A DNA stretch of 64,000 bases. Source: Ruditapes philippinarum (lineage: Eukaryota). The stretch is taken from contig NW_026857826.1 in the NCBI RefSeq assembly GCF_026571515.1, positions 62,001 through 126,000 of the forward strand, read 5' to 3'. Made by a program: the position numbers and the translations under genes. Within the stretch, counting starts at the first letter, position 1. Every line of letters starts with the position of its first letter. The notes beneath the pieces were generated by a model that worked only from the letters and a program-made list of their open reading frames with translations, was not told the origin of the DNA and ran no database searches. Positions 34,651-61,540 of this stretch are shown here, piece by piece.

Positions 34651-34783
34651 ATGAATATAATCAGCATAGTTTTCTCCATGTTGGCATGTGTTTACAGTGT
34701 AACTATGTACCCACTAGACAATTTACCACTGTATCAAGAGGAAATGCTAGAAACGGACTACCCAGAGGTTTTGTACGATCCAG
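34651..34783 (+). CDS. Coding exon 1 of the precursor (signal peptide and start of acidic spacer)
   Basis: ATG at 34651 with A at -3; MNIISIVFSMLACVYSVTM/YP is signal-peptide-like; strong donor CAG|GTAAGA at 34783/34784, followed at once by an (AAT)-rich intronic tract. Confidence 0.85.
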
Positions 34784-37700
34784 GTAAGACAATAATAATA
34801 ATAATGATATTTATAATCATAATAGTAATCATAATAGTAATAATAAAAGTGAATAATAATAATATATTTTTTTAGAGAAGGTAACACATTAAGAATATAC
34901 AACAGCAATCATATAAAATTATATCTTATTTTTAATGTAGCCTTCTGAAATTAAAAAAAACAGTTTTTTTAAATGAACACTCACTACCTTTTTTATCATT
35001 TTATTCGCTTTTTGCGGCATTACTGTTTTATTTTAAAAACAAACTATAAAACTTACATATTTATAGTATTACCTTTTTATTTAATTATTTTATTGATATA
35101 TAGGAGACAATTTATGCTTTTGATAAGTTTAATCAGCAAGCTTCGTGATAGAGCGTGCAAATAAGTTATTGTGTGGAGAATCATAACGATTGTAGTGTTT
35201 AATTTTAATACAGGAAAAATAACATATAATACAAACGCAGTTAGGTAATAAATTGGGAAAAGGGAAAATTTAATGTAAAATAATCACACAACTTCAGTTT
35301 TTGTTTGCTACAATCAGATTTGGAATTTTGATATTAAAATAATAACTTGAGGATATTGGTATTTATAATTCATTTAATATACAAAAAAGCGTGACTTTCA
35401 CTTTTAAAATTGGAATAAAGAAGTAATTTATGTGTATCCCTGGTTGTATCATTTTAGATAAATTTTATATTTAAAGCCATTATGTCTTAAAAATGCTGTA
35501 ATTTTTATTTATCAAATTTAAACTTTCTATCTTTGGTATCTTGGCACAGTTACCCAAAATATTCAACTGCCATATATATAAAGTATATTTGGCTTATTTT
35601 GCTCTGTTTGCGAATGGTTTATTTAGTGAAAATACTACTTTGTTTACATTTTGCTACCTTGATAACACCTTACTGTATGTTCAGTGCTACATTTTCAGTT
35701 GTTGAATATCTAACATGCTGTTAATCAATTACAAAAAATATTTTCAAACACATATTTGCCATTTCGAAAGTATTTCAAAAATATGAATTTCTGAGGCATA
35801 ATATGCCTTCAAATAGTTTGTCAATATTGATATTTGTAAGGCGTGACAAAACGTTACTAATGGGTATCAACTTAAAAACATTCATAGCAGTCTTAACTAC
35901 GATTTACCAGTTCAACAATTTTTAAGTATCAGAAATTTGCTTTATTTCTTTTACTTCTTTGGCATGAAAAAAATCTTATCAATGATAATTGTAACATTTT
36001 AGAGTTTTTTCAATATTGATATTTGTAAAGCATGAATAATGGGTATTAAAGTATAACATCCATAATCGTGTAAAGTCTTAACTTCGATAAACAAGTTAAA
36101 CAATTTCTAACTATAAGAAATTTGCTAAATTTCTTTTAGTTCATTGACATGAACAAAAATCCTATCAATGATAATTGTAAATTCTCATTGTATCATTTAC
36201 CAAGCTCTTGAAATGTCGTGTCTATTTCCGTCCATTAAAAGCTTATTTTTCCACTTCGTTTGTTTTTCAATATCTTAATTGTATTGGTCATTCTTTAGAA
36301 GATCTGATATCAAAAGAGATACCTGTAAAGTGTATGCTATTCACAGACAAATTTAGTCCATTACTATAATTGAAATTCCTCCCTTTCAAACTTAGAAGTA
36401 CAATTAATTAGAGTCCGGCTGTCCGTCGCCGCTTTGAGCAACAATTAAAAAGAAGACAGATCAATGGGTACGGTAAACGTTTTATTATTTTTAATCAAGC
36501 TATCCATGCAATGAACTACATGACGAATGAGTTGCTGCACAATAACAATAATGATGTTTAAATTTTTATTGATATTCAGAATATGATATCGCATCTGTGC
36601 GCAAACAATCACTATTTTCATCAAAGCAAAAGAAACAAGATTTTACATACTACCATGTCTTTATATTTATTGCTAATATTTCTACTCAGCCTCCCCCCAC
36701 CCCCTACCAAACCAAAAACCGCAATAAATAAGCAAAACCAGTTATAAAGTACTTTGTATAATCTCAATATATCTTTGATGTCTGTTTAGTAAAAAAACTT
36801 AAATGTTTCAATATATCATAGGCGTACAAGTTTGTTTTATCCTCAGAACATATTTTTTTACAATCCGGTTGTCTAGCACCTGGGGACTTTACAATCAATA
36901 AAAAAACAATAGCTTAACGACGTTTAAATATCAAGACTTGATGATATTTGCCATGTAATTCAAAACATGTTATTTATATGTAACTTCGCTTTATTTCCGT
37001 CTTAATACAATTATACGTGTCTAGACATTGATTACAATACAGTGTATTTTCATTAGTTTTTTATTTTCAGTAAAACTATTAGGATTCGTAGGCACACTAG
37101 TTGTTTAAGTAGACATAACCATTTTTGTAATAAGATTGTATGTCTTTAAGTATATAAGACTTAATATAATTATACACGGCATCTAATAACGTCAGAATGA
37201 AACATGTATGATAAACTTTGGGAATAAAACCATTTTGATATGGAACCAAAATCTATTCAAAATAATGTTCAAGCTTTTAGACAAAGATTCAAAACAGATA
37301 CATACCGGTATAGTGTCCTGCTTGTTTAATTCAATTTCTATTTTGGGTACTCGGATTTTAAAATTCATATTTAACTTGTAAACGCATAGCAATAACAGTG
37401 TAAATAGAAAAACAAATGAATTTATCATCTTGCAAATTACACAGTTTCATGTTAAACAAGCCAATATAATATGGCATTTTGATATACATCTGATATTGAA
37501 TTCAATTAATCAACATTCTCAGAAACCGCTAATTTACCGAACTTTGTCGCAAAGTTTGAGGTAAAGTTAATGGCAGGATTTCACTTTCATTATATTGAAG
37601 GTGATATCATGTGGTTTAATTCCTCTAACAAGTTTATCAAGATCTACTCTCGATACAAAACCAATTTTCTATTTGATAAGCACAGAGGCATTTTAGTTAA

Positions 37701-40700
37701 TAAAATGTATATGAATGTGTTGGAATAGATACTTTATAATATTGTTGCATAAATCATTTAATCTAAATCTGTATGGTAAGGTGAAATTTTGAACCAAACT
37801 ATAATTTGTAGTTAAATATTCGATTTGAATTTGAAGATATGTGTTGTTGCAAGTCAGATAGTTATAAAAGGATAAACATTTCATCTGTTGGATCATAATT
37901 AATGGGAAAGTTCCAAGAATTATGTTAATGCCATGTAGAGTAGAGTAAAACTGTATTGTACTGTACGGTACATTATTTCTAGTTTCGCTTGTTACAAATT
38001 GTTAAATGTATAAGCATTGATTAAAGATATACTATATATTTTTGCAACACTTTTATCTAAAATAATATTTTTTGCAAAACTACAACATTAAAATGTAAGC
38101 TATGTTATTTTTTCTTCGAGCTAAAAATGTTCAATTTTTAAAACGTTTTAAAGAATGTGATCTGGAATTCAAAAGAACAAAAACTTGATTTTTATATTTT
38201 TCACCCATCTATACATCAAATCGCTTTATATTAAGCTTGTCGTAGTTTTTGTATTTTGTTAGCAATGCTTTTATATTGTCAAACCAATTTCTATACTGTT
38301 GGGAAAAGGCGTAAAATGAAACAAACAAACAAACAAAAACAATTTCTTTCAACAATCTTCTGTTTATCTTTTTATCTAAATTTTCTTTGTGTTTCTTTAC
38401 CAGAACAAGGTTTGAAAAGAAAAGCATAAAAAACATCAAAAGAAATGTCAATAATAACGTCAGTTTAACCTAAAAATAAATTTATACGCTTAATCAGATT
38501 TGCCTGTCAAAGCTTCTCGTTACATGTAAAAATGTAAATATCACGCTAAATATGTACGTTAATTATGTCTAAAATCAAGTTGTTTATCCTACTGACAAAC
38601 TTACATTGTCGAAATCAATGTTTTCAATTTATTTTACTTGTCTTCATGTTTCGTCAATCAAAATAGAAACAAAATTAAATTTAGATTTTCTAAAATAATG
38701 ATGTTCAAAAGATATTACATTACTTAGTTCATTTATGAAGCTGAAAATAACATGTTTACTGATGCTATTTTAATGTCTTTATCAATAACATTAGAATGAT
38801 ATTAATGAAAATAGATGTGTGTTACGTATATATGTTTTACAGAATTTAATGTGTTACAAGATTGATCAAAAGTACAAAGTTAATTTTTAACATTTTTTTT
38901 GTCAAATTCATCTTTTGAAATGATAAATAAATCATTTAGAAATATGATGTTGCCAATGAGTCATTACACAGCATAACGTATCTTTTTAAGTGGCAGCATG
39001 GCTGAGCGGTCATTCTTACCTTTGTTTCCTTGAGCAAGAACTGGACACTAATTGCTCAGTACTGGATGGTTCCAGAAATAGATTTGAGGGTGTGTCTATA
39101 AGCTATAAGCCTCTGTAAAGTCTGTATAAACCAAATGACACAGTAAGCGGCTTCAGGTTGATATTAACAAAATAAATTAGATGTATAATTTCGTCATGAC
39201 ATTTTATTTAGAAAGACGTATGCATTCTAGTTGGTCAGTAAACATTTTTTTATGAAACAAATGTCTCAAAACAATATCCAAGATATAATTCATTGATAAA
39301 GATGTGTAAATCATGACAATATTTCAACCCTCACAATAGAAGGAGTTATGTTACTTAGTTCTTGTAAGATGAAAGAAACTTAATGATGCTTGTTGATATA
39401 TTATTATAATAATAAAATCCCTTTTCTTATCCAATGTAAATGACGCAATCCTTGAGCATTTGAAACCTCTTCTAAGAGCTTAACAGAGGTAAATATTTTT
39501 CCAGAAAAAATCATAACATGTATCATTATTACAAATTGTTAGTGAAATATGTTTTAAAATTTCTTAACTGTTTATTTCATTTTTTTTCCATCTTTTGGCT
39601 GAATTTTGTTTTTTATTAAAAGTCTAGATTTGTTCCTTACTGTTTCGAAAAAATGAGAATAATATCAAAATGACAATTTAAACCCATAAAAGTAATAACA
39701 CTAATATTGGGCATATTAAAGTATTTTAGTTCTATTAGCTCTAACATTTTGACATTAAATTTCAGACTATTTCAAATGTTGACATATAAAGCAAATCATT
39801 TTACGATGCCTTTATCTATCAATTGACGAACAATATATTTGGTCATGAAGGAAATGTAGGCGTATTTGAAGAGAAAGTAAATAACGCCACTTGCATTCTG
39901 AAACTATTGATATAATTGCACTGTAAAACAGTATTCATTTTCATAAAACGTGCAACTATGATATATTATGATTTATCCTTTTGTAATTTTCAAGCTCAGA
40001 TATTGAAATATAAGACAGAATACAGAAAATAACACACTTTTATTCATACTTTAACACATTTTATGATTATGAGACGTAAAATGTAATATGTGATCTTCAT
40101 AAAAGTGGCAAAATGTTAAACCATATAAGAACCTTAAATAACAAAAGCAAGCAAATCAGATTTTTATATTATAGAAGGAATAGTGCAAATCAAACATGCA
40201 ACCTTCAAATTGGTAGCACCGAGTCTGGAATGTTTATTATTTTGCCGCTTTTTTTTGGAGGGGAGGGGGCTGTTTGGAGTTCCGTTTTCTTTATTTTTTC
40301 CCCAAAAAATTTTCTTCAATTAAGCATACATTATAATAGTAGAATATCAGCGTTGAATATTTCTTTCAGATAAACATTTAAATAAATCATTTAAAAAAGG
40401 TTATAAACTTTTCCGGATATTCATTGAACATCTCTTTTCCGTAACGGTTGTTTAGTATGAATTTCATCATATGAATCAAATATCTTATAAATAGACGCAC
40501 GTTAAGTAACTTATCCCTCTGAAAGACATCACTTCTATTAAAGAAGCATTTGAGAACTATTGATCGAATTCTGTCGTAGCAGCCAATTTTGGAATGAATA
40601 CAGAATGATATTCCAAGTCACGTGGAGAAAATCTGTCATGAATACAATAAAATGTGTAAATGTTGAGTCAAAATAAGTTTATATATTTCCATTATTGTAT

Positions 40701-43700
40701 AATTTAATATTTTACTATTAATAATCCACGTGAACCTCGGACATTTCTCTAAGTATCGTTCGGAATGTACATGTATCGGTAACATCACATTTTGAAAAAG
40801 ATTGGTGCTTTTTATAATTTTGGTAGTTTCTATATAGTATTCTCAACATTTTTCATTATCAATTATCAATTATTATATCAATTTTTGCTCATTCCCCCAT
40901 TATAATAGCCAATGTATTAAAAAATAAGCACTTTGTCACTTTAATTATCAATAACTGCTTTTATAAAAACGTTTTATCATAAATAAAATATTAAAACAAT
41001 CGTAATGATTGATCAAAGTTTGATATACAGATATACATTAGTTTAAAATACATTTAAAATTTGTTTACCATATATTAAGAGAACTAAGATATGATAAACA
41101 AGATCACCAAGGAAAGGCGGCGTTCAAATCCATGTTTAAAAAACTACTAATGGTTTGTACCTAAACAAAACGTCAAGTCCCTGTAAAGTTTTTTTAAGAA
41201 TACAATGATAAGATAATTGATACAAAAACCTGAGTTAAAGATTGAATAAAAACCCAACAGTGATGAATATTATCTCAACTCCTGCTGAAAAAAATGAAAG
41301 CAATAATTGGGTCAAATTTTCTACATTTTCGGTGGATTCTAATACATTTAGTGCTCAAAACTGGCTATGCTGTTTCTAGGTGGCATGAAGTTGGACTATT
41401 CTGTTGTTTTTCATGAACCATAGAATCAAACAGTCTCATTTACAGGGTGGAGATTCTTTTGGCATCGTGCTGATATGCTCTATAGACAAGTCTTATTTCT
41501 AATAATTAAATCTGTTGCAAAAACGGTTTAAAATATAATTATAAAGCTATAGCTATAGCATGACACATGACAATTCAATACAATTTTCAGGTTTTGTTTG
41601 TGATACTTTATTAAACGTGATATAGATATCGGTCTTGAAATATAGATGACTTTCTACTTGGCAATTCTGTAGGTGGAAGTTTAAATATATTGTTTTATAT
41701 TATTTTCAATTTTCTGAAAATTCAAAGAGGACTGAATTAATGAATAAAAATAGTTGTTATTATCTGGTGATATTAGGAATTTTCTTCATTTAATTGAAAT
41801 TTTAAATATATTTGTTAGCGGAATTTGTGTTCAAATATCTTCAAACAATGACTGTAACTCCATTCAAAAATTAATGCATATTATAAGAGAAAATTCATGG
41901 AACATGCGATCAATAATTTTATTGACCTTATTCTTTTTCTAAACTGTTTATAAAGCATCGGGAATAAAGTGCACTCCGATATATTTTACATCTATCTTTT
42001 ACTCTCCTACGTTTTTATCTCTTTTATTCTTTAGTATATACTCGTAGTTTTAACAGAAAAAAATGTTAATTGCAAAGTCCAATCTACTGACACCATACTT
42101 AAAACAAATGGAACACTTTTGCTACAACTTTATTGTTGCCTCGAGCGGAATCAATGAGTTCTTTATCTCCATGTATTAGGTTGAACAATGGTTCAGGTGA
42201 TTTAGATAATGGCTTTAGTCAAACGCGTGTAACATTTACCATAACATGTATTCAAGTACCGCTCGTGTTAGTCCCATAGCTTTCAAATGAGTTTACTGTT
42301 ACTTTTTATAGGCAATCCAATAGCATCATGTACTTTTAAATAACTTTGAACAGAGCTATCAAATACCATTTGATAAATGCAAAGAGAGTACATGTGATTA
42401 AACATATATCAAATTTCTATGTAATGTCCATTACTCTCGTAATAAAAACATCAAATAAAAATATAAAAGAAGTACGTAAAATTGGACGATGCTTGATGTA
42501 AAAAAAATATTATATGACAAATGTATATACATAAATATGTATTAGATTTCAAGTAAAACATCAAGCAATTCTGTCTGTAAAAAGTTTTTCTTTAATTAAC
42601 GGGATATTACTTGTTTCTATGAACCTATCCGTTTGAGCCGGTACAATAACTAGGGATACTAAGCAATCGGAAAATTTTTATAATAAATCATAAACTACCA
42701 AATCAATTTTATTTTTAAATGAAAAATGCAAACAATTGGGAAATAATCCATAACTACCATCAAAGAATATTACTAACAATATATTTTATTTAAACGTTTG
42801 AAAAACTAATTTTATTCCGAAATGTTAAAGCTGTCATAATATTTATGTTTGACTGATCACTGAGAAAATGATATTCATAATTTCAAAAAAATTCTCGAGT
42901 TAATGGCTATTAATCAAAACAGTTTGCACTTTATTATGGAGTTGTATGTAATATTAGAAATCAAAACGCTAAAAAATATGCATTATATTCAATGCTTTAT
43001 CGTTTTACATACACATATCTGCATGGTATTTTATTTTCAAACTCTAACATAATTAACAATTAATACCCCTCGAAAACATGTTTTACACTAATTCTTCGGT
43101 ATAGATATGATCTTAAAATGTTCAGAGATAACTAAAGGTTAAATAAAAGAAATAGTCAAAAGGCTTATAAAATTTCAAAGATAAGTAAATGTGTTCACGC
43201 TTTTAGAAGTTTTTTTTTGTTGGAACTTTTCATGTAAATGGATAAAAAGATTAGCTTTAGGTAAAAAATAAAATATTAGCGTAATGAATGCTAAAGAGAA
43301 AACTATATATTACGTAAAATACATTGATTTCTATTCTGTGCATATAATTATCAACTGAATTGTTTCCTTATTCATGTGTTTAATCTAATATCGTTTCAGA
43401 GGTGATCCTGCCCTACACATCGTATCCATCTCCAGTTATTGTATACCCAGAATTATCACTTTCAAAACGACAAGACACTCGCAATGTTAACGGTAAGTTC
43501 AATATCACAACACCACAATAGTCATATATTACATTTGAATGTGTTGCATCAAAACTATTTTTCGTTTTTTATATTTTGCTATATTATTTTACTATTATTC
43601 ATATTCATTTACGAGGTATAGATTATTATCAGTCATACATAAAAATCTCTGAAACAGCTCCTATTTATAAAACTGTATCATTTTTAAGAAACTGCCATTT

Positions 43701-44037
43701 CTACGTCTGGTGTAACGTTTTTGAAAGAAAACATTTAATTTCAACTAAAAATACAAAAAGAAACTTAAAAAATAAGATGTAATTTGTAGGTATCTCTTAG
43801 ATGTTAAATAGATCTGAAACGTTTAAAATCTATTTTTATTCAGTTTTATCAAAACATTTACATTAAGAGTGTTATACATCTATATCTTTTGTATCTACGT
43901 ACTCATTTATATTTTCAGTGAACAAAAGAGCAACACTTAATCAACTTTTAAGACGCCTTATTGCCTTATATGGAAACAATGACATAGCATTCTCTGGCAG
44001 ATCATCTCATGTGCGATTTGGCGCAGGAGGCCGATGA
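34651..44037 (+). CDS. Spliced gene for a putative neuropeptide/peptide-hormone precursor, 114 aa, join(34651..34783,43400..43492,43919..44037)
   Basis: Exons of 133+93+119 = 345 nt joined at canonical GT-AG sites (both phase 1) give one open frame: MNIISIVFSMLACVYSVTMYPLDNLPLYQEEMLETDYPEVLYDPEVILPYTSYPSPVIVYPELSLSKRQDTRNVNVNKRATLNQLLRRLIALYGNNDIAFSGRSSHVRFGAGGR*. Hydrophobic N-terminus, two KR convertase sites, terminal GR amidation signal, downstream AATAAA. Confidence 0.85.
34790..34863. repeat. Imperfect (AAT)n microsatellite at the start of intron 1
   Basis: aataataataataatgatatttataatcataatagtaatc...; source of the spurious poly-Ile tail of ORF 34651..34875. Confidence 0.85.
35813..36185 (+). 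repeat. Diverged tandem dimer, ~188-bp unit
   Basis: tcaatattgatatttgtaa...tatcaatgataattgtaa occurs at 35821-35995 and again at 36010-36180. Confidence 0.85.
36297..37189 (+). repeat. Dispersed ~0.9-kb repeat, copy 1 (in intron 1; partner 63120-64000)
   Basis: Continuous alignment at ~85-90% from agaagatctgat to tatacacggcatctaataa. Confidence 0.92.
38294..38340 (+). mobile_element. 5'-truncated SINE/LINE tail
   Basis: tactgttgggaaaaggcgtaaaatgaaacaaacaaacaaac is nearly identical to the 3' end of the SINE at 58080-58123. Confidence 0.75.
38990..39140 (+). mobile_element. Decayed CORE-type SINE
   Basis: A-box-like TGGCTGAGCGG followed by a CORE-domain-like tccttgagcaaga...ctaattgctcagtactggatggttccag. 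Confidence 0.6.
43400..43492 (+). CDS. Coding exon 2 (Pro/Tyr-rich spacer, first KR site)
   Basis: Acceptor TCGTTTCAG| at 43399, donor ACG|GTAAGT at 43492/43493; 93 nt, phase 1-1; reads (E)VILPYTSYPSPVIVYPELSLSKRQDTRNVN and continues the YPE/YDP-type composition of exon 1. Confidence 0.85.
43919..44037 (+). CDS. Coding exon 3 (second KR site and predicted mature amidated peptide)
   Basis: Acceptor ATATTTTCAG| at 43918; reads (V)NKRATLNQLLRRLIALYGNNDIAFSGRSSHVRFGAGGR then TGA at 44035-44037; locally raised GC. Confidence 0.88.
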
Positions 44038-44396
44038 CACCATTCGTTGCTAAGCAATGCAACACATTTTAGAATGTGATATCAAAAGCACGCCTTTCGA
44101 ACATGATCAAGTTCTTGTGAGAAAAAAGAATCTTATTTCATTCATTTCTGTTTCATTGTGACAGACATAATGAGAGTATGGGCACGTATTAAGTTAGGTT
44201 ATACGTTCATCACAGAAATTTGTTTTAAAAGTGTAAAATTAAGTACTGAAAGTCATGAAACTGTATCTTTTTATCAAATACAGGGACACTCACCATTTCT
44301 ATCTAATCTTGTTCATTCTAAAGTATTTGTATCGTGCAAAGCTCTTTGTAAGTATTGAGATGTAAGTGTTGATATTTTATTGTTTTGAAATGTTTG

Positions 44397-44452
44397 AATA
44401 AAATGTAGAGTCAAAGAGAGTCACCACATCGTGTTATTTTTATTTTGTCTTT
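44397..44452 (+). terminator. Probable polyadenylation signal of the precursor gene
   Basis: AATAAA at 44397-44402, about 360 nt after the stop, followed ~30 nt later by a GT/T-rich element (gtgttattttttattttgtcttt). Confidence 0.55.
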
Positions 44453-44601
44453 AAAGTCAGGGGTTAAACAGAAATAAATAATAAGACCCTGCTAAAATAG
44501 GGCATCCAAAAGGACCCATTCTGGTTTGAATAAGATAATTGTGTTCAATTTTATTAATGTGTCGTATGGTCCTTTTCAAATGTAGGAATGGTCTGTTTAT
44601 G

Positions 44602-44864
44602 CCTGTAAGGACATAAAACATACGCCTTGATAAATAAATAAACAAGATAAACAATTTCTGGCGCAAACCAAGAGAAATATTTATACCAAAGTGCATAAAT
44701 ACAGTTCCGAAATACATAAACGATCAATGGAAATATGCATGATAATGAAACATAATGAATAACAACAATTACCTGTAAGGACATAAAACATACGCCTTGA
44801 TAAATAAATAAACAAGATAAACAATTTCTGGCGCAAACCAAGAGAAATATTTATACCAAAGTGC
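44602..44864 (+). repeat. Exact ~93-bp direct repeat, period 170 bp
   Basis: cctgtaaggacataaaacatacgcc...atttataccaaagtgc at 44602-44694 and 44772-44864. Confidence 0.92.
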
Positions 44865-46940
44865 GCATGCGTGAGGTGGATTTTCCGGGAAGTTTGTAAA
44901 AACTGAGGCCCGGCATGCAAATTATGTCAAATGAAATATGAGAAATTAGTTGTTGTAATGAGATGATGAAATGGAATGATATAGGAATGATATGGGATAA
45001 TGGATTGTATATCGGACTGTAAACAGACAAATACAAAAGATATATATACAAATACAAGGACAAAATGATACATAAAAACGATATTCAAAAACACGAATAT
45101 CGACCACATGACAAATGTATCAACAGATTATGTTTACAAAACATGATAAGACTGAACACAAATAATTAGAATGTTTGATGTTGTGTCTTTTAAAATTTGT
45201 ATTATTTCCCAAAACAATATTCATGACACTGAAATAAGATATAAAAAATATAATTCACATTATTTAAACAATAAATATGCAAATTACTTTCAATCAAACC
45301 AAGTTTGCAATTTTCATGTTGTTGTTTTCAATGCTCATGTGAGATTTTCCCCTATTTCAGATTTTTATATGCATAATCTTCGTATGCCATTTAAACTCCT
45401 TCTATTGTATTCAAAATACGATATATTTTTTCAAACGAAGAAGCATCCGTCTAGTTTAAGTGAAGCCAAATCTTCAAAGACATAATAGAAATTCTCTTAA
45501 GACCTATCATGAGAAAACAGTTTTTAAAAGACAGATTACCGGAGAGGAAACAGGACTAAAATATGTATGCACTTGGTTTTTTAAATTGCCACTGTTCATA
45601 ATTGACAATATAAAAACTTATATGCAGATAGATGATGAAGTTTGGTTACGAACATAAAAGAGAAAAGTATTCCGAATGTATTTTCATATTTTCTGGGGCC
45701 AGAGAGTCACGTCAGAATAGTATAATTTTTTATTATATATTTTATATAGATATGTAACATTTAAAGATTTTGTCCATATTCCATGCCTAAGTTTTGTCTT
45801 GCGGGTATATAGAGAGAACACATACAGAAACATAATTGTGACATTAGTAATACCTTTGCTCTTTACCAAAGCGACTTAATACTCGCGAAATTTGCAGTCA
45901 CTATGTTTACGTGAAAGTTTGTTTTCGTGCAAAAACAATCCTTATGAAAAACGCGAACTATTGTTCCGCAAAGTTTCTAGGAATACAGTATTTCAGGTAG
46001 ATTTTAAACATAATCATAAAGAACACGCGACGTCAATATAAAGTAACAGAAATTTTAATTGTGAATTGTCAGGAAATACATATCGTTTGGGCGGCGACAA
46101 ACAATGTTCAAACATTTTTATAGCGACCTTTCCCTTTTAGTTTAGACTCTGAGTTCAAATGGACAGTAACTGGATTTTTTCCAACTCAATGTTATATATA
46201 AAGTGGACCTCTTAAATAAGCTTAAGGTTGGCCTTGATCTAAGTGTTCTTCGAAGAGAGTTGGAAGTGGGTATTAAGGAGGCTGCATATATATTTTGTTC
46301 ATCCATATATCTGAGGTTATATGTAATGTGTATAAGGACTGGGGAAGATAAAAAGATTATATATGATTAATGTTACGACATAAAAAAAAGATTCATGATT
46401 ATTTCTCCTGTTTTTTTTTTAAATTATTCCCACCCAAGTACGTTTACTTTTGCTGCTTCCTTTTGAACAGATTCTATCTTTATTTCTTCTTCAGTAAGGA
46501 TCACATACAACTTGAGCATTTTCAAATACGAAACAAAAATACATTCTTTGAAAACATTTTCATTCGTTGGGGATTAATGTTTGTTGATTGCGTAGTTCAG
46601 GTCAACCACGAAATTAAGTCCCAAAGAACAAAATGTGCACAAGATTGATAAAGTGGTCTCTGTCAGTCAATAGAACTATAAAACGATGGGTGTGGTTCGC
46701 AATTGCCTTCATCCTTTGTTGACAAGTTGTGCGCGCAAGTACAGCGTCGTAAACACGTCTTGCTGTGTAGCTAAAGTAATTTGATGGTGCATCATCACAG
46801 GCGAAAGGTCGACGTTTTTACACATCTTCATAAAGTGTCTTTACACAACATTTATTTTTACAATTAATAGATGCGCAACAGATATAAATAAAATATAATT
46901 GAGAAAATGTAATTCAGAAGACGTACATGTATCATCCTAT

Positions 46941-47178
46941 TTGCCTTACAACACTGTAGGTTCGAGCCGCTCAAGTTTCGAAGTATTCTTCATGTGAGAA
47001 AGCTACCAAGCTAGCTTACGGAATGTCGTCGGTTCCACTCAGGTGCCCGTTTGTGTCTGAAAAAAAATGTACAGAGGGTCACATGAGGTCTTCCTCCTCC
47101 AGTAAAGTTCTGGAAAGGCGCTATATGATCTATAACGTGTTGGAGCGACATAAAACTCAACCAAAGAAATAAAATAAG
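46941..47178 (+). mobile_element. tRNA-derived SINE (Meta-SINE-like), 5' end eroded
   Basis: B-box GGTTCGAGCC (46959-46968); body ttcatgtgagaaagcta..cagctagcttacggaatgtcgtcggttccactcaggtgcccg...gaggtcttcctcc; A-rich tail. Confidence 0.75.
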
Positions 47179-48939
47179 ACACCTGTCAAAATAGATCTTT
47201 AAAACAGTGCAACATTTAAAAGAAGTTGTATTTCATACTTAAAATGTTTTGATTGTTTTTTGTAGCGTTCAGAAACTGCAAAATGAATTGTTGCGCTATT
47301 TAATATCAAGAACTTTTTTTCCTTAAAAAAATAGAAACTAACAAATGAGAACATGCTTGAAAAAAAAATCATTTTATAAAAACATGATTGGAACAAACCA
47401 ACATAACATACTTATTATAGGGTAAAGGACAGCGTACGTTAAAAAACATCATATTTTTTAAACTTATTTAACATTGGTTTGAACAGAACATAACTTCTCA
47501 ACTATGCTTCTTGCATCTGGTTTTAACTCGAAAGTAATGTTTTTAGAAATGACGTTAAATATATGTCATTGATCATTTAGAGCAAATTTAAATGAGACAA
47601 TCATGTTTTTATACTTCCTTCTGCATTAAATGAAATATTGGAAAGTAAATAAAGGAATAATGATAGTTGTGATTGTTTTCCTAGTCACGTTTTATAAATA
47701 CATTCGGTTAAATTTTCTCAAATCTTTACCGCAGCTGTTTTAACGATTGATAATGTCAACTTGAATTTAACATCAGGCAGTGTAGTTTAAAAGTACTGAA
47801 TAAATTTGCATAGTGTTGCTATTTATGACGCCTTGTATGTTGCAATCGGTACATTGACGTTAAATATAGAACCCGATACCAGAACACTTTATAATTGTTC
47901 CTCATGTATAATGTTAGGTTAGATTAAATAATTTTACAAACTTAAACTTTTCTCTTTTTTCATTCTATTTTTGTTGTTTTTTCTTTGTTTTGTCGTTTTT
48001 GCAATATTTACCACAATAAAAAGGCATTTCATCTAATTGGGCTCGGCGTATTTTCCCTATGTACATTATTAAGATATATTTCCTGCCAAGATCATATATC
48101 AACGCAAATATAATTTTTTTTATCAAATCAAAGGCATTAACCCTGAAAACCAATGTCGTTTGTGGATCAAGGTCAAAATAATCACACTATGCACAAGAAG
48201 ATGTATTAAAAACTCCAAATTTTATTATAACTAGTTCAATGATGTTTTTGAGTTTTTCTCTAGAAACTCATCAGCAACAATTTTCACCAACTATGTAATT
48301 TTTTACAATAACTGCAGTATGTTAGGTATGAGAAGGTACGCTCATCCCATAATGTTACCCGAGAGCGTGCAGCCAATCACCCTGACGTACGGAAAGCCTC
48401 AAACCAATACATCTCCCTTATAATATAATATCTTTTGCTGGCTGTGTAATTATACTATATTTAAATTGATACATAACTAGTTTTGCTTCTTTATTCGCAA
48501 GTTTATTAAATTTTATATAAAAATATTAACTTTGCTTATTTTTTGGAACCAAAAAGGGTTAATAAAGACCTGCCGACTTCCATGAAAGGTTTTCGAAAAT
48601 TTTAAAATGAGAATGAAAAAAATCAAAAAAAAATCAGCAATCAAATTGTCGGCATTACATGGGAATTACAAATACTGAAATTACAAATCTCGTCCAAGAA
48701 CTAATAACATTTCAGAAAAAAACGCTACGGAACTGAAAATAATGTTTTGCTAATTTTCTTTTTTCACTCATAACAATTGCACATAAACTTCCTTTTTAAT
48801 GGGAACCACAATCAAGATAATATCACATTAAATACTACGTGTCCAATGTGGTATAAACACATCTGACACATCTTCTTTTTAATTAAATTCCATTGTATTA
48901 TCCATTCCCGGTATATATTAAGTAAACATTTTACTTTTG

Positions 48940-49340
48940 AACTAGTGCTAGTGGATTATAAGACATAATCATTGAGCTGATAAAACAAACGAAACCTAGG
49001 TCGAGCCAGTATATGCTAAACAGAAGACTTTAAATATTTCCCTTTTTATGACTATATAAAAACATAAAATAAATCATTGCCATGTGTTTTAATAATTGCA
49101 TTAACTCCTTTTTGGACTTTTGATTCAGATGTTATATCTGTAGCTTGGTAAATCTCCTATGAACAGATTCATTAAATCGAGTCTGCAAATTTCTGTGTGT
49201 TTTTGATTTCATTGCTCCCAGGAGCTTTTCCAAAGTTATATTACATTCTTGTTAAACAGATCAAAATTATATTAAGCCTGAATTTCAATTCATTACCAAA
49301 CCCAGCTTAATTATGTTCTTCGCTTACAGCCCACATCTCC
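48940..49340 (-). mobile_element. Very decayed non-LTR retrotransposon (LINE) ORF2 3' remnant
   Basis: Minus-strand fragments HRRFTKLQI, GNDLFYVFI and YWL occur in the order of the R..TK.R / GDEFH...C / YYW..P motifs at the C-terminus of RTE-X-like LINEs; many stops. Confidence 0.4.
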
Positions 49341-51892
49341 TTTCAACAAATACAACGATTAAAATATTGAAATTTCATTATGATGGTGTTGGTCAAGCGA
49401 AACTACGACTCCCACATTATTTCTGATTTAGGGTACTGAAGGTCAAATCAACACAGTTTTATTTCTAAGGTTCCTATTAAATATCATTTATATCATATAT
49501 AATACGTTTTACCGATATGATCATCAATGTATTCGTATGATAAATAAAAGAAATGATGTAAGAAGCAGTTAACAGAAATGTTTCACTAATTCCTCTGTAA
49601 AAATAATTTTTAGACTACTTTTCTTTAATTAAAGTTATAACAATCAAATTTTTTGATTATTTCAATGTAAATAAAACTTATTGTCAAGAAACATTTCAAT
49701 ATAATCAATGTTATTTAACTTTAATTTTAAGAGAATTTTTCTTTAAATGTTCACTATTTGCCATATACATTCATTTGTCCGGTAAATCGATGTCATCATA
49801 TGATCTATAATCTATTTGGAGACGAACTTTACAAGACTTGATATCTTTCGTTCTAATCCATTTCCACATTGTATATAGCTGAATGTTCATAATGTTTTGT
49901 GTATGTTCTGAAATAAGATAATTATGTTAAAATTATGCTCCTTTTCATTGGCCGCAATGGTATTTCGCTGATTCTGCTGATAAAAAGGCATGTGTCATTG
50001 ATCTACTACATGTACTTTACTATGCAGAAAAGAGATGCCAAAATAATTAAGTACATTTATTGTAAAATGCGAGAATGTTTTCATTACAGTTTTGTAACTT
50101 ATGTTACTAAAAGAAAAGCTATATGGAATTAAATATGCAAGTCATGCAGCTCTGAAATAAATAACATACACTGATTTGTTCCGCTAGTCTTTATTCGATA
50201 TATGAACAAGGCTCTTGATGTAATATGCGTTTATATATCGTAAGGCATTGATATCAAATAACTTCATTTGATATGGTGATATATTTGAATCTTAATAAAC
50301 ATAATGACGTTCAATTTCTTAAGAGAATGTTACAAACTTCAAATGAGAGCATTATTTGTATGATACTGACAGCGTTTCATTTCGTTTGATATTTTTCTCA
50401 CTTAAATTCTTTTCTGGTCTATAAAATGTGTCTAAAACTACTGTATTGATTTACATAAAAAAATACTTCAAAATGGCAAATGAGTGGAACAATGTAGCAT
50501 ATAACAAAAAATGATAATGATAAAAAAGAATAATAGTGTCATTGATTTACTGAATTCATCATTTTTTGTATTCAAAGAATTATAATGAAAGCAAAGCGAT
50601 ATCATAACAATATGGATGACAAAGTGTGTGGGTGGAATTTTCTGTCTGTCAATTTAATGAAAACTTACCCATAATAATAAAAGTCAACCATTATTCCTTT
50701 TTAAGAACATACTATGTCTCTGGTTCTACTTTAAATAAGTACGTACAGAAACTCTAAAGTAAGTTCACATATTTTATGAATATATATTGTGTTCGTACCA
50801 CTACCAAATATTAATATTATATCACAAGTTTCAATTAAATTTTCTTTGAAGTATTATACTTGTTTATATTACAACCTCTTGCGTGAGGTTGAAAATAGAT
50901 ATCTTACGTTCGGGCTTCTTGTTTCCATAACTACTCGTATAACTTGTGTTACTGTATACTAAAATGTCGGCTTCAGAATTATCAAGTTTATTTCCCTTCT
51001 TTGACTGATTAAAATCTAAATTTAAAATACTGCTATTATCATGAAACATTATACTACCGGATATTTCAGGAGCATAATCTGACGAAGTATTGAAAACTAT
51101 GTTAATTCAACGAAACCATTGTACCCACAAATAACTTCTACTTGAGATTGTCCAATAATTCTCTAAAATTAAATACGAAATTTCAGATGAATCATTCCTT
51201 TTTGCAAGATAATATGTTTTATATAGTCTTTAGCAACTCTCTAGTATTTTTTTAACTGTTCAATACTGTACCATAATTCTCCAGATTCTTATAGCATAGC
51301 ATATTCATCTCAAAACGGGAAATTTAAACTGACCTATTTTATTACTCATTTCCAAACGTTATAAAAGACAGTATATCAAATGCTGGCATGGTTGTGAAGG
51401 GTCAAATGAATGTCATTTGCTATCTGTAGGATACAGAATTGTGATTCTACTAGATCCCTAGTAGATCAAGATATATTCAACGAGACGACACAGTGCGACA
51501 ATCAGTTTTATTACCATGATATTCCAAAACAATGTTCTTATGCCTTATGTCGTATCCAAGCTTTGAGAAAACATCATATTCAAATGAATAATAGAAGGTT
51601 TAACCGCAAACTAAAGCAAGAAATAGATAGCTAAATACGTTTACTTTATATTTGTTTACCCTTCCTAGCTCTTATTTTTATTTACAATCAAGGCAGAGAC
51701 TTTAAATTACCATATTTTATTCACTTGGAAATTTTTATAAAGATAAATTTTATTATTCGGCTAACATATCGAAAACAGATATTATGCACAAACCTCTAAA
51801 TTTTAAAACGATATGTGCTGTAGTTTCAAATGATATCAAGTGTTATTTACTCCTTATATTCTGCAATGTTGAAAGGTTGGATATATTGGAGA

Positions 51893-51962
51893 TAATTATT
51901 ATTATTGTTATTGTTGTTGTTATTATTATTATTATAAATATTATTATTATTATTATTATTTA
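51893..51962. repeat. (ATT/GTT)n microsatellite
   Basis: attattattattgttattgttgttgttattattattatt... Confidence 0.9.
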
Positions 51963-52153
51963 ATTCTTTATGTTTTACCATGAAAATTTGTTTGAATTAA
52001 AAAACGTATACAAAAGGGACATTTTCTGAAAATGTCAAAAATCTATGATAAAATTTAACCATACATTGAATATGCATTTCAACAAAAAAAAATGTTACAA
52101 TTCTATTTAATCACAAATGATACAAAATGATACTACTTCAAAGCAAATGATTA

Positions 52154-52338
52154 TTAACCATTTCCGTGCTGAATTACAACGATTGGCCTTTGCCCAGCTA
52201 GCACATCTAAGTCGTCTACCATGGCTCTATAATGTTGGCTAACTAACTGTTTTCGTTTAGATATCCGCACATTTTTTACAGTTTCATAAATAGAAGCTGG
52301 ACGAGTCCACCAAAAGAATTCAGCATATAAATGCTGAA
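52154..52338. mobile_element. Decayed short TTAA-type MITE
   Basis: Begins TTAACCatttccgTGCTGAATT and ends AATTCAGCAtataaatgctgaa (imperfect TIRs); ~185 bp. Confidence 0.5.
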
Positions 52339-55062
52339 TTAATACAAATATGATGGAAACGTACTTGCAAAATAGTTTTTAGATATTTGCTGATTCATGA
52401 TAAAAGGCAATTTCTGTAGAATGCAAATAACGTGTCGTATTTAAAGCTACACTAAATTGAGAGAGCAATTTTATTTGTCAATCAAATCAATATGAATTTT
52501 GAGACATTTAGCTTTTGAAAGCAGACCTGTACATAACCCTGACAAAAAAGAACAGGTAAACTTATCCAAAACCCACGTTTTTTCACATGTGGCAAAATGT
52601 TAAACGCTTATGAAGATTAACGTTCACAATTTAACTGTGAAACAATTTTAACAAGTTGTGAAACAATTTTAACAAGTTGTCTACATCCGAGATGAATTCT
52701 ACCAATAACCACAAATGCTCTTAACTTCACATATTGAGTTTTATTTTAGTATTTGAATGGTGCCATTGATCTTTAAATCTGTCAATGTTAATGTATATTC
52801 ATTTCTAAAAAAATGTTTTCATACATTTTTAGTTTGGACAGCATAAGGGGAAAGAGGAAAGTTGAATCGTAATTTCCAGTAGAAAATGATTTAAAATTCA
52901 AGCTGCAACATTTTACATTTGACTCTATTTTGAAAGCTAAACGCGACTCAGTTTTCCTTTAATAATTTGTAAATTATATAAAATTATATGATTATATACC
53001 ATTAAGTTTATCAAAAGACTTAAAGGAACTCCAGAGAGGTCTACACGCTTAAAGAAATAGGATATTTAATTTTAACATAATTTAGTTCAGGCACTAATAA
53101 CAGAAAGAATAGGAAATATACTAGAAAAAAATTGAAAATCGTACTTTTTGTGCTATTCTTAGCCCGATTTGAGTAAATAGATATGCTACGATTTTTGTTT
53201 GGATCATTTTTCACAATTAGAATAATGCTTCTGGGAAAAACGAAGCGAATGCTCAGATAGTTTGCATAGAAGTTATTTGTCTAGACCTTCATCAATTGGA
53301 GCATTAATCTCAAAAAATATTTTCAGTTCCGTCATGTTGGAAAACTTCAGTGGAATCCATTCAACATAGCCTATGTCTTAGTGAATAGTGTTTCTGATGT
53401 TAACTGAAGCTTTCTTAAACAAATCAACATTAACAATAATTTGTATAACTACAGCAACGTTACAAATTCAGAGTCTTGACTTTCAAGACTCAAATTTGAG
53501 GAAGATATATGTAAGACCAATGTATGTTTTTGAAACTAATTCCCCAAGTACATGTATTAGGTCTCTGGTATGAAAAGATATATTCTTTTATCAAACGAAT
53601 GATAAAGCTAATATTGAATTGAAGCTGGCATTTTTTAAGAACAAAAATATTTTATAATTATTATAATGATATATTATCTGACCGTTTTATATGTGTTCGT
53701 TATACCCTAATAGCAATAAAATAAAATAAAGTAGCATAGCAATTTGATTTGTATGAAAACACTTTGTAACAGAGTATCAGTATTTTTTATTATTTCTGAG
53801 AGTAAATGTAGTCAATTTGCAGTGTACGATATCAAAGATCCTGTATGTTGTAATTAGAGTTGTTACCACACAAATATTATACAAGTATGACTTGTAATTA
53901 TGCTTCTAAAACAATTTTTGAACATCAAAGAATATGTAAAATATGTACTGCAGTTTTTGTCCACATTATATGTAGTCATTAAAATATATGCATTCATTTC
54001 TTATAGAAGAATTTGACTTAGACTTTAAAAAGAATAAATTCCTTATAACCTCCCTTTATTAACATGAAATTTAAATTCGGTAATATCTTTACAAATAATG
54101 CTTTTTGGAACTTACAATATTGATAAATCTTCATTTGAGCATTATATTTATGATATAAAATCATAAAATATTGAGCTACAGGATCTTTAAATATATCACA
54201 CTAATGGTAAAATATAATTTAATAACTAACCACGTTCTTTGCCATGTAGGGATTCACGACAGCAAAGGAACAACTTGATTAAACTATTTCGCCTACAAAC
54301 ATAGTTAATTGCAGGATTAGTATAACCGCCGACATAAAGACTAGATTCTAATGAGTTTCGATTTAAATTGAGTTTTAAAGGAAATCTTATTTGGACTAAA
54401 TTTTCATTAAAATATTCACAAACAAAATTAGAATTTAGTTTATTGTAACAAAAATTTAAATATTTGTGTTTTATATTCAGAGGGAAACAATTTCATTTAA
54501 ATTAACCCGGTGTTGTATATATTAAATGATAGATGAAACATCCTCAGAATATTTGTATGTTTGTTTCTTCGTTGCATAATCTTAATTTTACATGATTGTT
54601 GAAATATTATCATACAATACTTCATATTTTGAAATCTCGGGTTTTTGAGGAATTATATTATCATTATGCTTTAGTCTTAATACTCGTGCTCGTAAAGATC
54701 GGAAAACAGTTTCTATATGACATTTACAAATAATCCACTCATTCATGAAATTCTTAATAAAGTGTTCTTGCTACAGATATAAATCACGCGTTGTGGTATC
54801 ACAAAACTGATGCCTTCTGCTGGTCTTGTTATTTTGGGTCTTTTTATAGGTTTATTTTCTTTTTTTCTTTTTTCTAATGTGGGTTTTGGTTTTGAGGTTT
54901 GTTTGTGTGTTCTTTTTGTCTAAAGATTTTGTTGTTGGTTTGTATGTTGTTCTTTTTATTCTTGTTTTTGTCTTATTGCTGCTTCCGCGGCTGCCCACTG
55001 GTATATAATTTTCTAGGCACAAAATACATAACTTACATACCTTCTAGATGTTGAGAAAGTTT

Positions 55063-55295
55063 CTTTGTTTGTTTTGTTTTATTTCAAGTCATATCGACAC
55101 TGAAGAGGTCATACGGTGAAGGACGGTCTGTATGAAATGATAGTTGTTCAACTCGGGTGCCCTTTAGTTCCTGAAATTATATACACAGGAACACTTTAGT
55201 AGAATAACCGACAATCCGTAAGATAGCTGGAAAAACATTTTTGACGGGATTCAAACCCAAAGAAGCAAGGGCAAGTGATGTATAGTCGACGTTTA
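55063..55295 (-). mobile_element. tRNA-derived SINE, same family as 46941-47178
   Basis: The reverse complement shows B-box GGGTTTGAATCCC, body ccagctatcttacggattgtcggttattctact...ggcacccgag and an (AAAC)n tail. Confidence 0.7.
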
Positions 55296-57906: not shown

Positions 57907-58126
57907 ACCGCCTCCGTGGTCGAGGTGTTAGAGTCGATGACTTCTTATCCAGTTACCTCTCTGGCGTGGGTTTGATCCCGGGAGATGCTTTGGCAGTTTA
58001 GCGCGAAGGAAGGTAGTCTAGTACTGGTGAAACTCTCCAGGAACGATGGTTAATAAACTACCCACCTATATCACTGAAATACTGTTGGAAAAAGGCGTAA
58101 AATGAAACAAACAAACAAACAAACCA
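57907..58126 (+). mobile_element. tRNA-derived SINE with (AAAC)n tail
   Basis: A-box TGGTCGAGGTG, B-box GGTTTGATCCC, 3' end atatcactgaaatactgttggaaaaaggcgtaaaatgaaac(aaac)n. Confidence 0.8.
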
Positions 58127-61100: not shown

Positions 61101-61540
61101 AGAAATCCGTACATTTATGGCCATATTGGTATTTAAAGGCCTTTTATGCTTCAGGAATGTTTTCCTTGCCTTGTATGTGTGCGCGCGTGTGTGAGTGTGT
61201 TGCTTCTAGGCAATTAATGCAGTTATAGTGTTTAAGTTTTTGTAAGGAAGTCGAAACACAACTTGCTTACATCTTGCTACTTTTAAGACAAATTATTTCA
61301 CATTTTGCACTTCTCTCTTCAGATAACTGGCATCTGCCATGCTCTAAATCCAATCATTGAACATTATAAAGTTCAAGCTTGCCCTTTCTACTGAGGCATA
61401 ATCTACCTTTAAGTATTTCATGAATAAAAAAATGCCCCGGTAAAATATTCAGGAAAAATAATAAATAAACTATTTGGAAAAAATACTTATTTCATGTGAG
61501 TAAGGCTTTATCCAAGTGTGGTTGAATGCAAGAATGCAAG

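What the first reader, a model, noticed from the sequence alone, without database searches (positions are those of the whole stretch)
34651..44037. Hidden three-exon gene for an unassigned neuropeptide precursor ending in -RFGAG-amide
Seen: three exons with canonical phase-matched splice sites give a 114-aa ORF with a signal-like N-terminus, KR at two sites and a terminal GR-stop. Established: prohormone convertases cut at KR, carboxypeptidase E trims Arg, and PAM converts a terminal Gly to an amide. Inference: the products are a 33-aa amidated peptide ATLNQLLRRLIALYGNNDIAFSGRSSHVRFGAG-NH2 and a 9-aa pyroglutamyl peptide pQDTRNVNVN. I cannot match it to molluscan FMRFamide, LFRFamide, luqin, NPF, sulfakinin/CCK, NKY or other families I know, so it may be the ligand of an uncharacterised signalling system. 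It is the best candidate for a novel system in this window.
Basis: partly seen in the sequence, partly recalled or inferred. Interest (0 to 1): 0.85.

Follow-up and report, generated by a model that had tools for sequence, protein, structure and literature searches.

The report
Clam SYGAGamide/WGAGamide neuropeptide precursor gene
The three-exon gene is real and expressed, but it is already annotated in the Manila clam genome and belongs to a bivalve neuropeptide family already named (SYGAGamide in scallop, WGAGamide in oyster), whose function and receptor are still unknown.

Summary
Exons 34651-34783, 43400-43492 and 43919-44037 (+ strand) have GT/AG borders and matching phases and encode 114 aa. 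RNA contigs from three separate studies join all three exons.

The gene is not hidden. An identical 114-aa protein is in RefSeq as "uncharacterized protein LOC132751167" of Ruditapes philippinarum, on a contig of this contig's length.

The peptide is not unassigned either. A search with exon 3 alone found relatives, and every named one is a bivalve. Conservation sits in the two KR sites and the C-terminal peptide. The pectinid members match the published scallop "SYGAGamide" precursor, fragments of which were found by mass spectrometry in nerve ganglia. Its oyster orthologue is "Cragi-WGAGamide". No function or receptor is published for either.

Most likely it is a secreted prepropeptide giving a C-terminally amidated peptide. 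That is either the 33-mer ending RFGAG-amide or, if the invariant internal Gly-Arg site is cut, a 22-mer plus SSHVRFGAG-amide. The pyroGlu nonapeptide lies in an unconserved linker and is probably a spacer.

One new detail: exons 2-3 sit in a 27-kb tandem duplication that excludes exon 1. The second cassette keeps 211 of 212 coding bases, against 87-92% identity in the introns.

Verdict: a new member of a known kind, of modest interest.

The parts
34651..34783 (+). Exon 1, coding part: Met1-Pro44 plus the first base of the Glu45 codon. It holds the signal peptide (about residues 1-16 or 1-19) and the start of the acidic spacer.
   Evidence: In some searches the N-terminus has a 12-residue hydrophobicity of 2.76 and AF2 predicts a helix at 2-18. 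The loose ends of RNA contigs in X1, X3 and X8 match the end of this exon. It has only one copy in the genome.
34784..43399 (+). Intron 1 (8616 nt, GT..AG, phase 1). The left edge of the tandem duplication lies inside it, at 36307.
43400..43492 (+). Exon 2: rest of the spacer, the first KR site (Lys67-Arg68) and most of the variable linker QDTRNVN(VN).
   Evidence: RNA contigs cover 43397-43491.
43493..43918 (+). Intron 2 (426 nt, GT..AG, phase 1).
   Evidence: a joint that skips 426 bases, GT..AG, is seen in one contig each of X1, X3 and X8.
43919..44037 (+). Exon 3, coding part: the second KR site (Lys78-Arg79), the conserved peptide, Gly113-Arg114 and the stop codon.
43930..44028 (+). Coding sequence of the conserved peptide Ala80-Gly112 (33 aa). 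It contains an invariant internal Gly102-Arg103 site and the core Arg108-Phe109.
   Evidence: AF2 predicts a helix at 82-93.
44038..44403 (+). 3' UTR, with AATAAA at 44397-44402. The RNA contigs of X1 and X8 end at 44403.
36307..63119 (.). Tandem duplication unit A (about 26.8 kb). It holds exons 2-3 but not exon 1.
63143..64000 (.). Start of tandem duplication unit B, which runs on beyond the window to about contig position 153307. Its exon 2 and exon 3 copies lie at contig C6313:133070-133162 and 133552-133670, outside the window.

Best explanation
This is the Manila clam (Ruditapes philippinarum) orthologue, LOC132751167, of the bivalve neuropeptide precursor family published as SYGAGamide (scallop) and WGAGamide (oyster). 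Shown here: a three-exon mRNA is made. The protein has a hydrophobic signal-like N-terminus, an unconserved acidic spacer, two conserved Lys-Arg sites and a conserved C-terminal 33-residue segment ending Gly-Arg-stop. Inferred from the standard prohormone pathway: signal peptidase removes about 16-19 residues. A prohormone convertase cuts after Lys67-Arg68 and Lys78-Arg79. Carboxypeptidase E removes Arg114, and peptidylglycine alpha-amidating monooxygenase (PAM) converts Gly113 into a C-terminal amide. The product is either the 33-mer Ala80-Gly112-amide or two amidated peptides. The two-peptide outcome needs cleavage at the invariant Gly102-Arg103, which would give Ala80-Ser101-amide (22 aa, helical N-terminal half) and Ser104-Gly112-amide (SSHVRFGAG-amide). 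The authors of the oyster paper likewise predict two amidated C-terminal peptides. The peptide(s) presumably act on an as yet unidentified receptor. The QDTRNVNVN linker is most likely a spacer.
For: Gene model. RNA contigs of three studies join exon 1, exon 2 and exon 3. The RefSeq protein P0016 (XP_060597284.1/XP_060597286.1) is identical to the model and sits on a 154345-nt contig, the length of this contig. Family: phmmer with exon 3 alone found 14 proteins at E <= 0.001 among 1.84 billion representatives, 6 of them at E <= 1e-10. All named members are bivalves, from Solemya and Sinanodonta to pectinids and venerids. Column conservation is 0.96 and 0.92 at the two KR sites and 0.73 in the peptide, against 0.21-0.38 elsewhere. 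Invariant residues are L85, L89, A91, G94, I98, G102, R108, F109 and G112. BLASTP of P0016 against the Pecten maximus member gives E = 3e-13 over residues 77-114. The published scallop SYGAGamide precursor (PMC5996578, supplement) has the same C-terminal peptide as P0013 and P0014. YSLNDLIAR and YSLNDLIARL, which start right after its KR site, were detected by LC-MS/MS of nerve ganglia. The oyster partner XM_011449597 corresponds to XP_011447899, Cragi-WGAGamide. AF2 predicts a signal helix at 2-18, a helix at 82-93 and disorder elsewhere. The nearest ESM-Atlas clusters are mostly neuropeptide precursors, which is a lead only.
Against: There is no peptidomic or tissue evidence for the clam itself. 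The runs are coded, so neural expression could not be checked. The one raw-read RNA run shows only about 1x depth on the exons. The scallop MS search used trypsin rules, so the detected fragments prove that the protein is present in ganglia but not the exact natural ends. In oyster no peptide was detected and expression in visceral ganglia was very low. No SignalP or NeuroPred run was possible. In the clam the residue before the conserved Tyr-Pro is Met, an unusual -1 residue for signal peptidase. I did not see the oyster sequence itself. Its link to this family rests on the two papers' statements and accession tables.
Confidence: 0.88

Rival explanations
1. The family is a diverged branch of a bilaterian RFamide-type family (NPY/NPF-like or QRFP-like). 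On this view an ancestral ...RF-Gly amidation site acquired a short Ala/Pro-Gly tail, and the peptide acts on one of the orphan RFamide-type GPCRs of bivalves.
For: The Arg-Phe-Gly core is conserved (R108 and F109 invariant, G110 in at least 90% of members) and preceded by a helix, and the peptide sits at the C-terminus of a precursor of about 110 aa. The tail after RF varies in length between lineages: GA, GP, AG, GAG, GPG or ALG before the amide donor. ESM-Atlas neighbours include NPFF, QRFP and, for the C-terminal part, pancreatic-hormone clusters at 0.83-0.89, which are leads only.
Against: None of 13 members hits any Pfam neuropeptide family even at E <= 10. As encoded, the peptide does not end in RF-amide in any member. 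Bivalves already have separately catalogued NPY/NPF, NKY, luqin, LFRFamide, FFamide and CCK precursors, according to the papers read. The Atlas scores are in the range that shuffled proteins also reach.
Confidence: 0.1
2. It is a secreted peptide with a non-neuronal role, for example an antimicrobial or tissue-signalling peptide with a cationic helical segment, rather than a neuropeptide.
For: The layout is an anionic pro-region followed by a cationic C-terminal peptide with a helix. Expression in oyster visceral ganglia is very low. The tissue of the clam RNA runs is unknown.
Against: Fragments were detected in scallop nerve ganglia extracts, and the precursor was found in ganglion transcriptomes of scallop and oyster. 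The terminal amidation signal and the internal Gly-Arg are strictly conserved, whereas immune peptides usually evolve fast. The helix is only moderately amphipathic, with a hydrophobic moment of 0.50 that 634 of 5000 shuffles reach.
Confidence: 0.05
3. The ORF is a chance assembly of open frames and is not a gene.
For: None remains after testing.
Against: Spliced RNA contigs in three studies, an identical RefSeq model and conserved orthologues.
Confidence: 0.01

Closest known systems
SYGAGamide precursor of the scallop Patinopecten (Mizuhopecten) yessoensis (MH045261; Zhang et al. 2018, PMC5996578)
   Same: Both have a signal peptide, a variable spacer, a KR site and a conserved C-terminal peptide of about 34 aa. 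The shared motifs are LN-L[LI]-RL-A, I--[ST]G[RK]S and RF followed by small residues, then a Gly plus basic stop-proximal amidation signal. The pectinid proteins P0013 and P0014 carry the published peptide and align to the clam protein at 55% identity over residues 77-114.
   Different: The spacer and linker are unrelated in sequence. Scallops have an extra KR-flanked upstream segment. The clam peptide starts ATLNQ rather than YSLND, and it has a dibasic RR inside the helix that scallops lack. The published scallop transcript ends RFAGGKR rather than RFGAGGR.
Cragi-WGAGamide precursor of the oyster Crassostrea gigas (XP_011447899.2; Réalis-Doyelle et al. 2021, PMC8398477)
   Same: Its authors align it with the scallop protein. 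Zhang et al. paired the scallop SYGAGamide with XM_011449597, which is its mRNA by the accession offset checked. [quoted passage not shown]
   Different: Its name implies a Trp-Gly-Ala-Gly end instead of Arg-Phe-Gly-Ala-Gly. It was too diverged to be found by my searches, so I could not align it myself.
NPY/NPF family (Pfam PF00159)
   Same: Both give a single amidated peptide of about 33-36 aa with a helical segment and an aromatic residue preceded by Arg near the C-terminus.
   Different: There is no RxRF/Y-amide end, no polyproline N-terminal segment and no Pfam match. In NPY/NPF precursors the peptide follows the signal peptide directly, whereas here it is at the C-terminus.
QRFP / 26RFa precursors (Pfam PF11109)
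   Same: In both, the peptide lies at the extreme C-terminus of a precursor of about 110-135 aa, with a helix followed by a Gly-rich stretch and RF-Gly.
   Different: QRFP ends in RF-amide, and the Pfam scan gave no match. The resemblance is one of layout only and rests partly on my own knowledge of QRFP.

Membership tests
Bivalve SYGAGamide/WGAGamide neuropeptide precursor | Significant sequence similarity of the C-terminal peptide to the published type sequence | tested here: met
   P0013 and P0014 (Argopecten, Pecten) carry the published scallop peptide, including the MS fragments, as read. P0016 against P0014 gives BLASTP E = 3e-13. phmmer with exon 3 alone reaches P0014 at E = 6.8e-4 in 1.84 billion proteins.
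Bivalve SYGAGamide/WGAGamide neuropeptide precursor | Precursor layout: signal peptide, variable spacer, then dibasic site(s) directly before the conserved peptide at the extreme C-terminus | tested here: met
   All full-length members have a hydrophobic N-terminus (12-residue KD of 2.35-2.96). The signal peptide was judged by hydrophobicity and the AF2 helix only, because no SignalP was available.
Bivalve SYGAGamide/WGAGamide neuropeptide precursor | Terminal Gly followed by basic residue(s) and a stop (C-terminal amidation signal), and a conserved internal Gly-Arg/Lys site | tested here: met
   G113-R114-stop. G102 is invariant and R103 is present in at least 90% of members (Lys in Solemya).
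Bivalve SYGAGamide/WGAGamide neuropeptide precursor | Expression in nervous tissue and detectable mature peptide | not testable with these tools
   Transcription and splicing are shown, but the runs are coded without tissue and no clam peptidomics is available. Ganglion evidence exists only for scallop and oyster.
NPY/NPF (PF00159) | Match to the family profile and a C-terminal RxRF/Y-amide | tested here: not met
   No Pfam hit for any of 13 members at E <= 10. The encoded end is RFGAG-Gly-Arg.
FMRFamide-like / RFamide peptides in the strict sense | Mature peptide ends in Arg-Phe-amide, encoded as RF-Gly followed by a basic residue | tested here: not met
   RF-Gly is followed by Ala-Gly-Gly-Arg in the clam, and by 1-3 small residues before the amide donor in every member.
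PDF/cerebrin (PF06324), DH31 (PF27927), QRFP (PF11109), NPFF (PF15085) | Match to the family profile | tested here: not met
   No hits. These families appear only as ESM-Atlas feature neighbours at 0.87-0.91 with low shared-feature counts.

The most novel reading that the evidence does not exclude
The gene may have one promoter and signal-peptide exon but two alternative downstream cassettes. Exon 1 lies outside a 27-kb head-to-tail duplication, and each unit carries its own exon 2, exon 3, 3' UTR and poly(A) signal. The second cassette has stayed intact: splice sites are kept and 211 of 212 coding bases are identical, while its introns diverged by 8-13%. This suggests that it is still used, perhaps by read-through splicing from the shared exon 1 under different regulation. 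Separately, the peptide, with its RF core plus a short amidated tail, may be the ligand of an orphan bivalve GPCR and represent a bivalve-specific signalling system.
Probability: 0.2. Interest if true: 0.5.

Novelty: new member of a known kind. Interest (0 to 1): 0.3.

Why it matters
It also shows that "no match to families I know" was a gap in recall, not novelty.

For biology, the value is modest but real:

- **Annotation.** The clam, Mercenaria, Mya, Mactra, Dreissena, Sinanodonta, Tegillarca, Solemya, Argopecten and Pecten proteins are all labelled "uncharacterized" or "hypothetical" in the databases. All of them can be named as SYGAGamide/WGAGamide precursors.
- **Age of the family.** A member in a protobranch (Solemya) and one in a unionid place the family at or before the base of living bivalves.
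- **Peptides to synthesise.** The alignment defines the constrained core: the helix motif, the invariant internal Gly-Arg, and RF plus a short amidated tail. This tells experimenters which peptides to make for receptor deorphanisation.

The family still has no known function or receptor, so it remains an open, testable orphan system.

Tried and rejected
- **Second exon 1.** DNA and protein searches of the whole genome found only one exon 1. Sensitive blastn and tblastn of the duplicated region gave only a weak hit at 57856-57930 (44% identity over 25 aa, E = 0.037). That hit has no signal-peptide start and no GT donor, so I rejected it.
- **ORF 61940-62278 as an alternative first exon.** Its translation is low-complexity with no resemblance to the family, so I rejected it.
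- **Copy B as the transcript source.** The three RNA contigs lack most copy-B-specific bases and share only three sites with copy B, where the assembled copy A seems to carry private alleles. This is no evidence for copy-B expression. It is also no evidence against it, because contigs drop rare variants.
- **Known protein families.** Pfam gave no family.
- **Known RNA families.** Rfam found nothing in 34000-45000.
- **Wider relatives.** The profile search of the 5.8-billion-protein set added only one further Argopecten isoform. It found no oyster, gastropod, cephalopod or annelid member. That search is limited by its word index, so absence beyond bivalves is not shown.
- **ESM Atlas.** On the C-terminal part alone it gave nothing above chance level.
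- **Amphipathicity.** The helix is not significantly more amphipathic than shuffles of it.
- **Literature.** Searches for RFGAGamide or RFGPGamide as names found nothing, and no Ruditapes neuropeptide catalogue listing this gene was found.
- **Exon joining.** I did not make the joined spliced protein by hand. Exons were searched singly by reference, and the full-length sequence used was the database protein P0016.
Full report
**1. The observation**

The window is G000:C6313:62001-126000 of a 1.4-Gb genome. At the stated places the + strand reads as follows:
- an ATG at 34651, open to 34783 and followed by GTAAGA;
- TTTCAG, then an open stretch 43400-43492, followed by GTAAGT;
- TTTCAG, then 43919-44037, ending GGA GGC CGA TGA.

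The lengths 133 + 93 + 119 = 345 nt give 114 codons and a stop. AATAAA lies at 44397-44402. The full-length sequence I used later is a database protein returned by a search.

**2. Is it a gene?**

Three independent lines say yes.

(a) Expression and splicing. The exon 3 plus UTR stretch is held by contig sets of 20 runs from 12 studies. Four of these runs are on record as RNA-Seq of a "mollusc metagenome". I laid window 38550-44549 against three contig sets from three studies and one raw-read RNA run.
- One contig each in X1, X3 and X8 skips 43492/43919 at GT..AG.
- Each contig begins its match at 43397 and carries before it the loose end AAACGGACTACCCAGAGGTTTTGTACGATC.
- That loose end is the end of exon 1, 34751-34780. 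The next three bases, CAG, are shared by the exon end and the intron end, which explains 43397 rather than 43400.
- So exons 1, 2 and 3 are joined in RNA. Two contigs end at 44403, just past the AATAAA.
- The contigs extend 191-343 nt 5' of the ATG. I could not see where that UTR maps.
The junction is therefore inferred from the loose-end letters, not from a listed joint.
- The raw-read run shows only about 1x depth on the exons.

(b) Independent annotation. A search with a 95%-identical relative returned P0016, 114 aa, [quoted passage not shown]. It sits on a contig of 154345 nt, exactly the length of this contig. It carries two RefSeq accessions, XP_060597284.1 and XP_060597286.1. So the organism is the Manila clam, and the gene is annotated but unnamed.

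(c) Conservation. phmmer with the 38 aa of exon 3 against 1.84 billion cluster representatives gave 14 proteins at E <= 0.001 and six at E <= 1e-10.
- The best is a 114-aa protein from a 965-nt Logan contig, with the hit at residues 77-114.
- The named members are from Mercenaria, Mactra, Mya, Dreissena, Sinanodonta, Tegillarca (two genes), Solemya, Argopecten and Pecten. All are bivalves, spanning protobranchs, unionids, pteriomorphs and heterodonts.

**3. Anatomy of the protein**

In the 13-member alignment A1 the invariant residues are M1, Y53, R68, L85, L89, A91, G94, I98, G102, R108, F109 and G112.

Mean frequency of the commonest residue, by region:

| Region | Conservation |
|---|---|
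| Signal region | 0.33 |
| Spacer | 0.38 |
| KR67-68 | 0.96 |
| Linker 69-77 | 0.21 |
| KR78-79 | 0.92 |
| Peptide 80-112 | 0.73 |
| Gly113-Arg114 | 0.85 |

- Every full-length member has a hydrophobic N-terminal core.
- AF2 on the alignment gives helices at 2-18 and 82-93 and disorder elsewhere, with mean pLDDT 61.
- The helix is only moderately amphipathic. Its hydrophobic moment of 0.50 is reached by 634 of 5000 shuffles.
- The tail after the Arg-Phe core varies by lineage. It is GAG or GPG in most members, GA in Solemya, GP in Sinanodonta, ALG in one unnamed member and AG in the published scallop transcript, each before the amide-donor Gly. The constrained end is therefore "RF plus two or three small residues, amidated", not GAG as such.

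**4. What it is**

A full-text search for "GAGamide" led to two papers.

- Zhang et al. 2018 (PMC5996578) named 13 new scallop ganglion neuropeptide precursors, among them SYGAGamide. Its sequence in their supplement ends ...KRYSLNDLIARLRAMVGSDEIRHSGRSSYLRFAGGKR. That is the same peptide as in the pectinid family members P0013 and P0014.
- Their LC-MS/MS of ganglion extracts found YSLNDLIAR and YSLNDLIARL, which begin right after the KR site. The search used trypsin rules. The fragments therefore show the protein in ganglia, and are consistent with KR cleavage, but they do not fix the natural ends.
- Réalis-Doyelle et al. 2021 (PMC8398477) described Cragi-WGAGamide (XP_011447899.2) as a mollusc-specific precursor. 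[quoted passage not shown] No peptide was detected by MS, expression in visceral ganglia was very low, and no function is known.
- Zhang's Ka/Ks table pairs SYGAGamide with oyster XM_011449597. The XM-to-XP offset of 1698 holds for two other pairs in the same tables, FYFY and GNQQN. It maps that mRNA to XP_011447899, so the two names denote one family.
- P0016 aligns to the Pecten member at 55% identity and E = 3e-13 over residues 77-114.

The clam gene is therefore a new member of a family that is already named and still orphan.

**5. How it most likely works**

Shown: the mRNA, the ORF, the conserved sites.

Inferred from the standard regulated-secretion pathway:
- signal peptide removal, either just before the conserved Tyr/Phe-Pro, where several orthologues have good -3/-1 residues, or after Ser16 in the clam;
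- convertase cleavage after KR67-68 and KR78-79;
- trimming of Arg114 by carboxypeptidase E;
- amidation by PAM using Gly113.

Two product sets are possible. The other arises if the invariant Gly102-Arg/Lys103 is a monobasic cleavage-plus-amidation site. It would give a 22-mer ending Phe-Ser-amide and the nonapeptide SSHVRFGAG-amide. The invariance of G102 and the oyster authors' prediction of two amidated peptides make me rate the two outcomes about equal.

The RR at 87-88 is not conserved (AR in scallops and Solemya) and sits inside the helix, so it is probably not a processing site. The linker QDTRNVNVN is the least conserved part and is probably a spacer. The receptor is unknown.

**6. Comparison with other families**

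No member hits any Pfam family even at E <= 10. Membership in NPY/NPF, PDF, DH31, QRFP or NPFF is therefore not supported.

ESM-Atlas feature neighbours of the whole protein are mostly assorted neuropeptide precursors at 0.86-0.91 with low shared-feature counts. That fits "looks like a prohormone" and nothing more. The C-terminal part alone gave nothing useful. An origin from an RFamide-type ancestor remains possible but untested.

**7. The duplication**

Exons 2 and 3 occur twice and exon 1 occurs once.
- Self-comparison of the contig shows a head-to-tail duplication. Unit A is 36307-63119. Unit B is 63143 to about 91307 in window-equivalent coordinates, which is contig position 153307, and the contig ends at 154345.
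- The left edge lies inside intron 1, so exon 1 is outside the unit.
- Between the copies, the coding parts of exons 2 and 3 differ at 1 of 212 bases. That one change is synonymous (43419 A/C). The splice sites are kept.
- The intron 1 tail is 86.7% identical, intron 2 is 91.8% identical with two large indels, and the 3' UTR is 96.2% identical. Comparing coding sequence with introns, Fisher p = 1e-8.
- This argues that the second cassette is, or recently was, under selection as mRNA, or that short gene-conversion tracts homogenise the exons.
- The three RNA contigs are of copy-A type, so use of copy B is not shown.
- An assembly artefact (two haplotypes in series) cannot be excluded with the calls I had, though there is no gap at the junction.

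**8. Verdict**

It is a real neuropeptide-type precursor with an orphan ligand, but it is neither hidden nor unassigned.
- Novelty: a new member of a known kind.
- Interest is modest. The useful by-products are naming about a dozen "uncharacterized" bivalve proteins, dating the family to the base of bivalves, defining the constrained core for receptor work, and the shared-exon tandem cassette.
- Among this scan's earlier notes, only one concerns this gene. It covers 43930-44034 of this same window. None was found for this family on other DNA.

Noticed in passing
window 36307-63119 and 63143-64000, continuing to contig C6313:153307: A head-to-tail tandem duplication of a unit of about 27 kb, 79-97% identical in blocks. 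Its left edge lies inside intron 1 of the neuropeptide gene. The second unit nearly reaches the contig end, so further copies beyond the contig cannot be excluded.
   Followed up: partly
window 9517-18361 vs 18404-24944; 409-8360 vs 27035-32599; contig C6313:53400-61000 vs window 8705-25382: Further nested segmental duplications (75-96% identical) fill the first half of the window and the 10 kb upstream of it. The whole region is a patchwork of tandem repeats of several kb. What they encode was not examined.
   Followed up: no
window 41085-41127: A 43-nt stretch inside intron 1 has enormous depth in all four RNA data sets (summed contig word depth in the thousands in its 200-nt bin; about 290x in the raw reads). 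The flanks are heterogeneous, and there are 'goes back' and opposite-strand joints. It looks like a short motif shared by many transcripts or a very abundant repeat. No Rfam family matches it.
   Followed up: partly
window 44561-45113: About 550 nt just downstream of the poly(A) site are present in copy A but absent from copy B. The stretch contains two direct repeats of about 95 nt (around 44603-44697 and 44773-44866), so it is probably an insertion of a small repetitive element.
   Followed up: no
window 3425-3593: The only run of N in the window (169 letters).
   Followed up: no
P0016 (database record): The same 114-aa sequence carries two RefSeq accessions, labelled isoform X1 and isoform X2, of one gene. 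This is unexpected for identical proteins. It might reflect transcript variants that use the two exon 2-3 cassettes.
   Followed up: no
Tegillarca granosa proteins P0011 and P0017; Argopecten P0013 and P0018: Other bivalves also have two near-identical genes or several isoforms of this precursor. Duplication or alternative 5' parts may therefore be a recurrent feature of the family.
   Followed up: no
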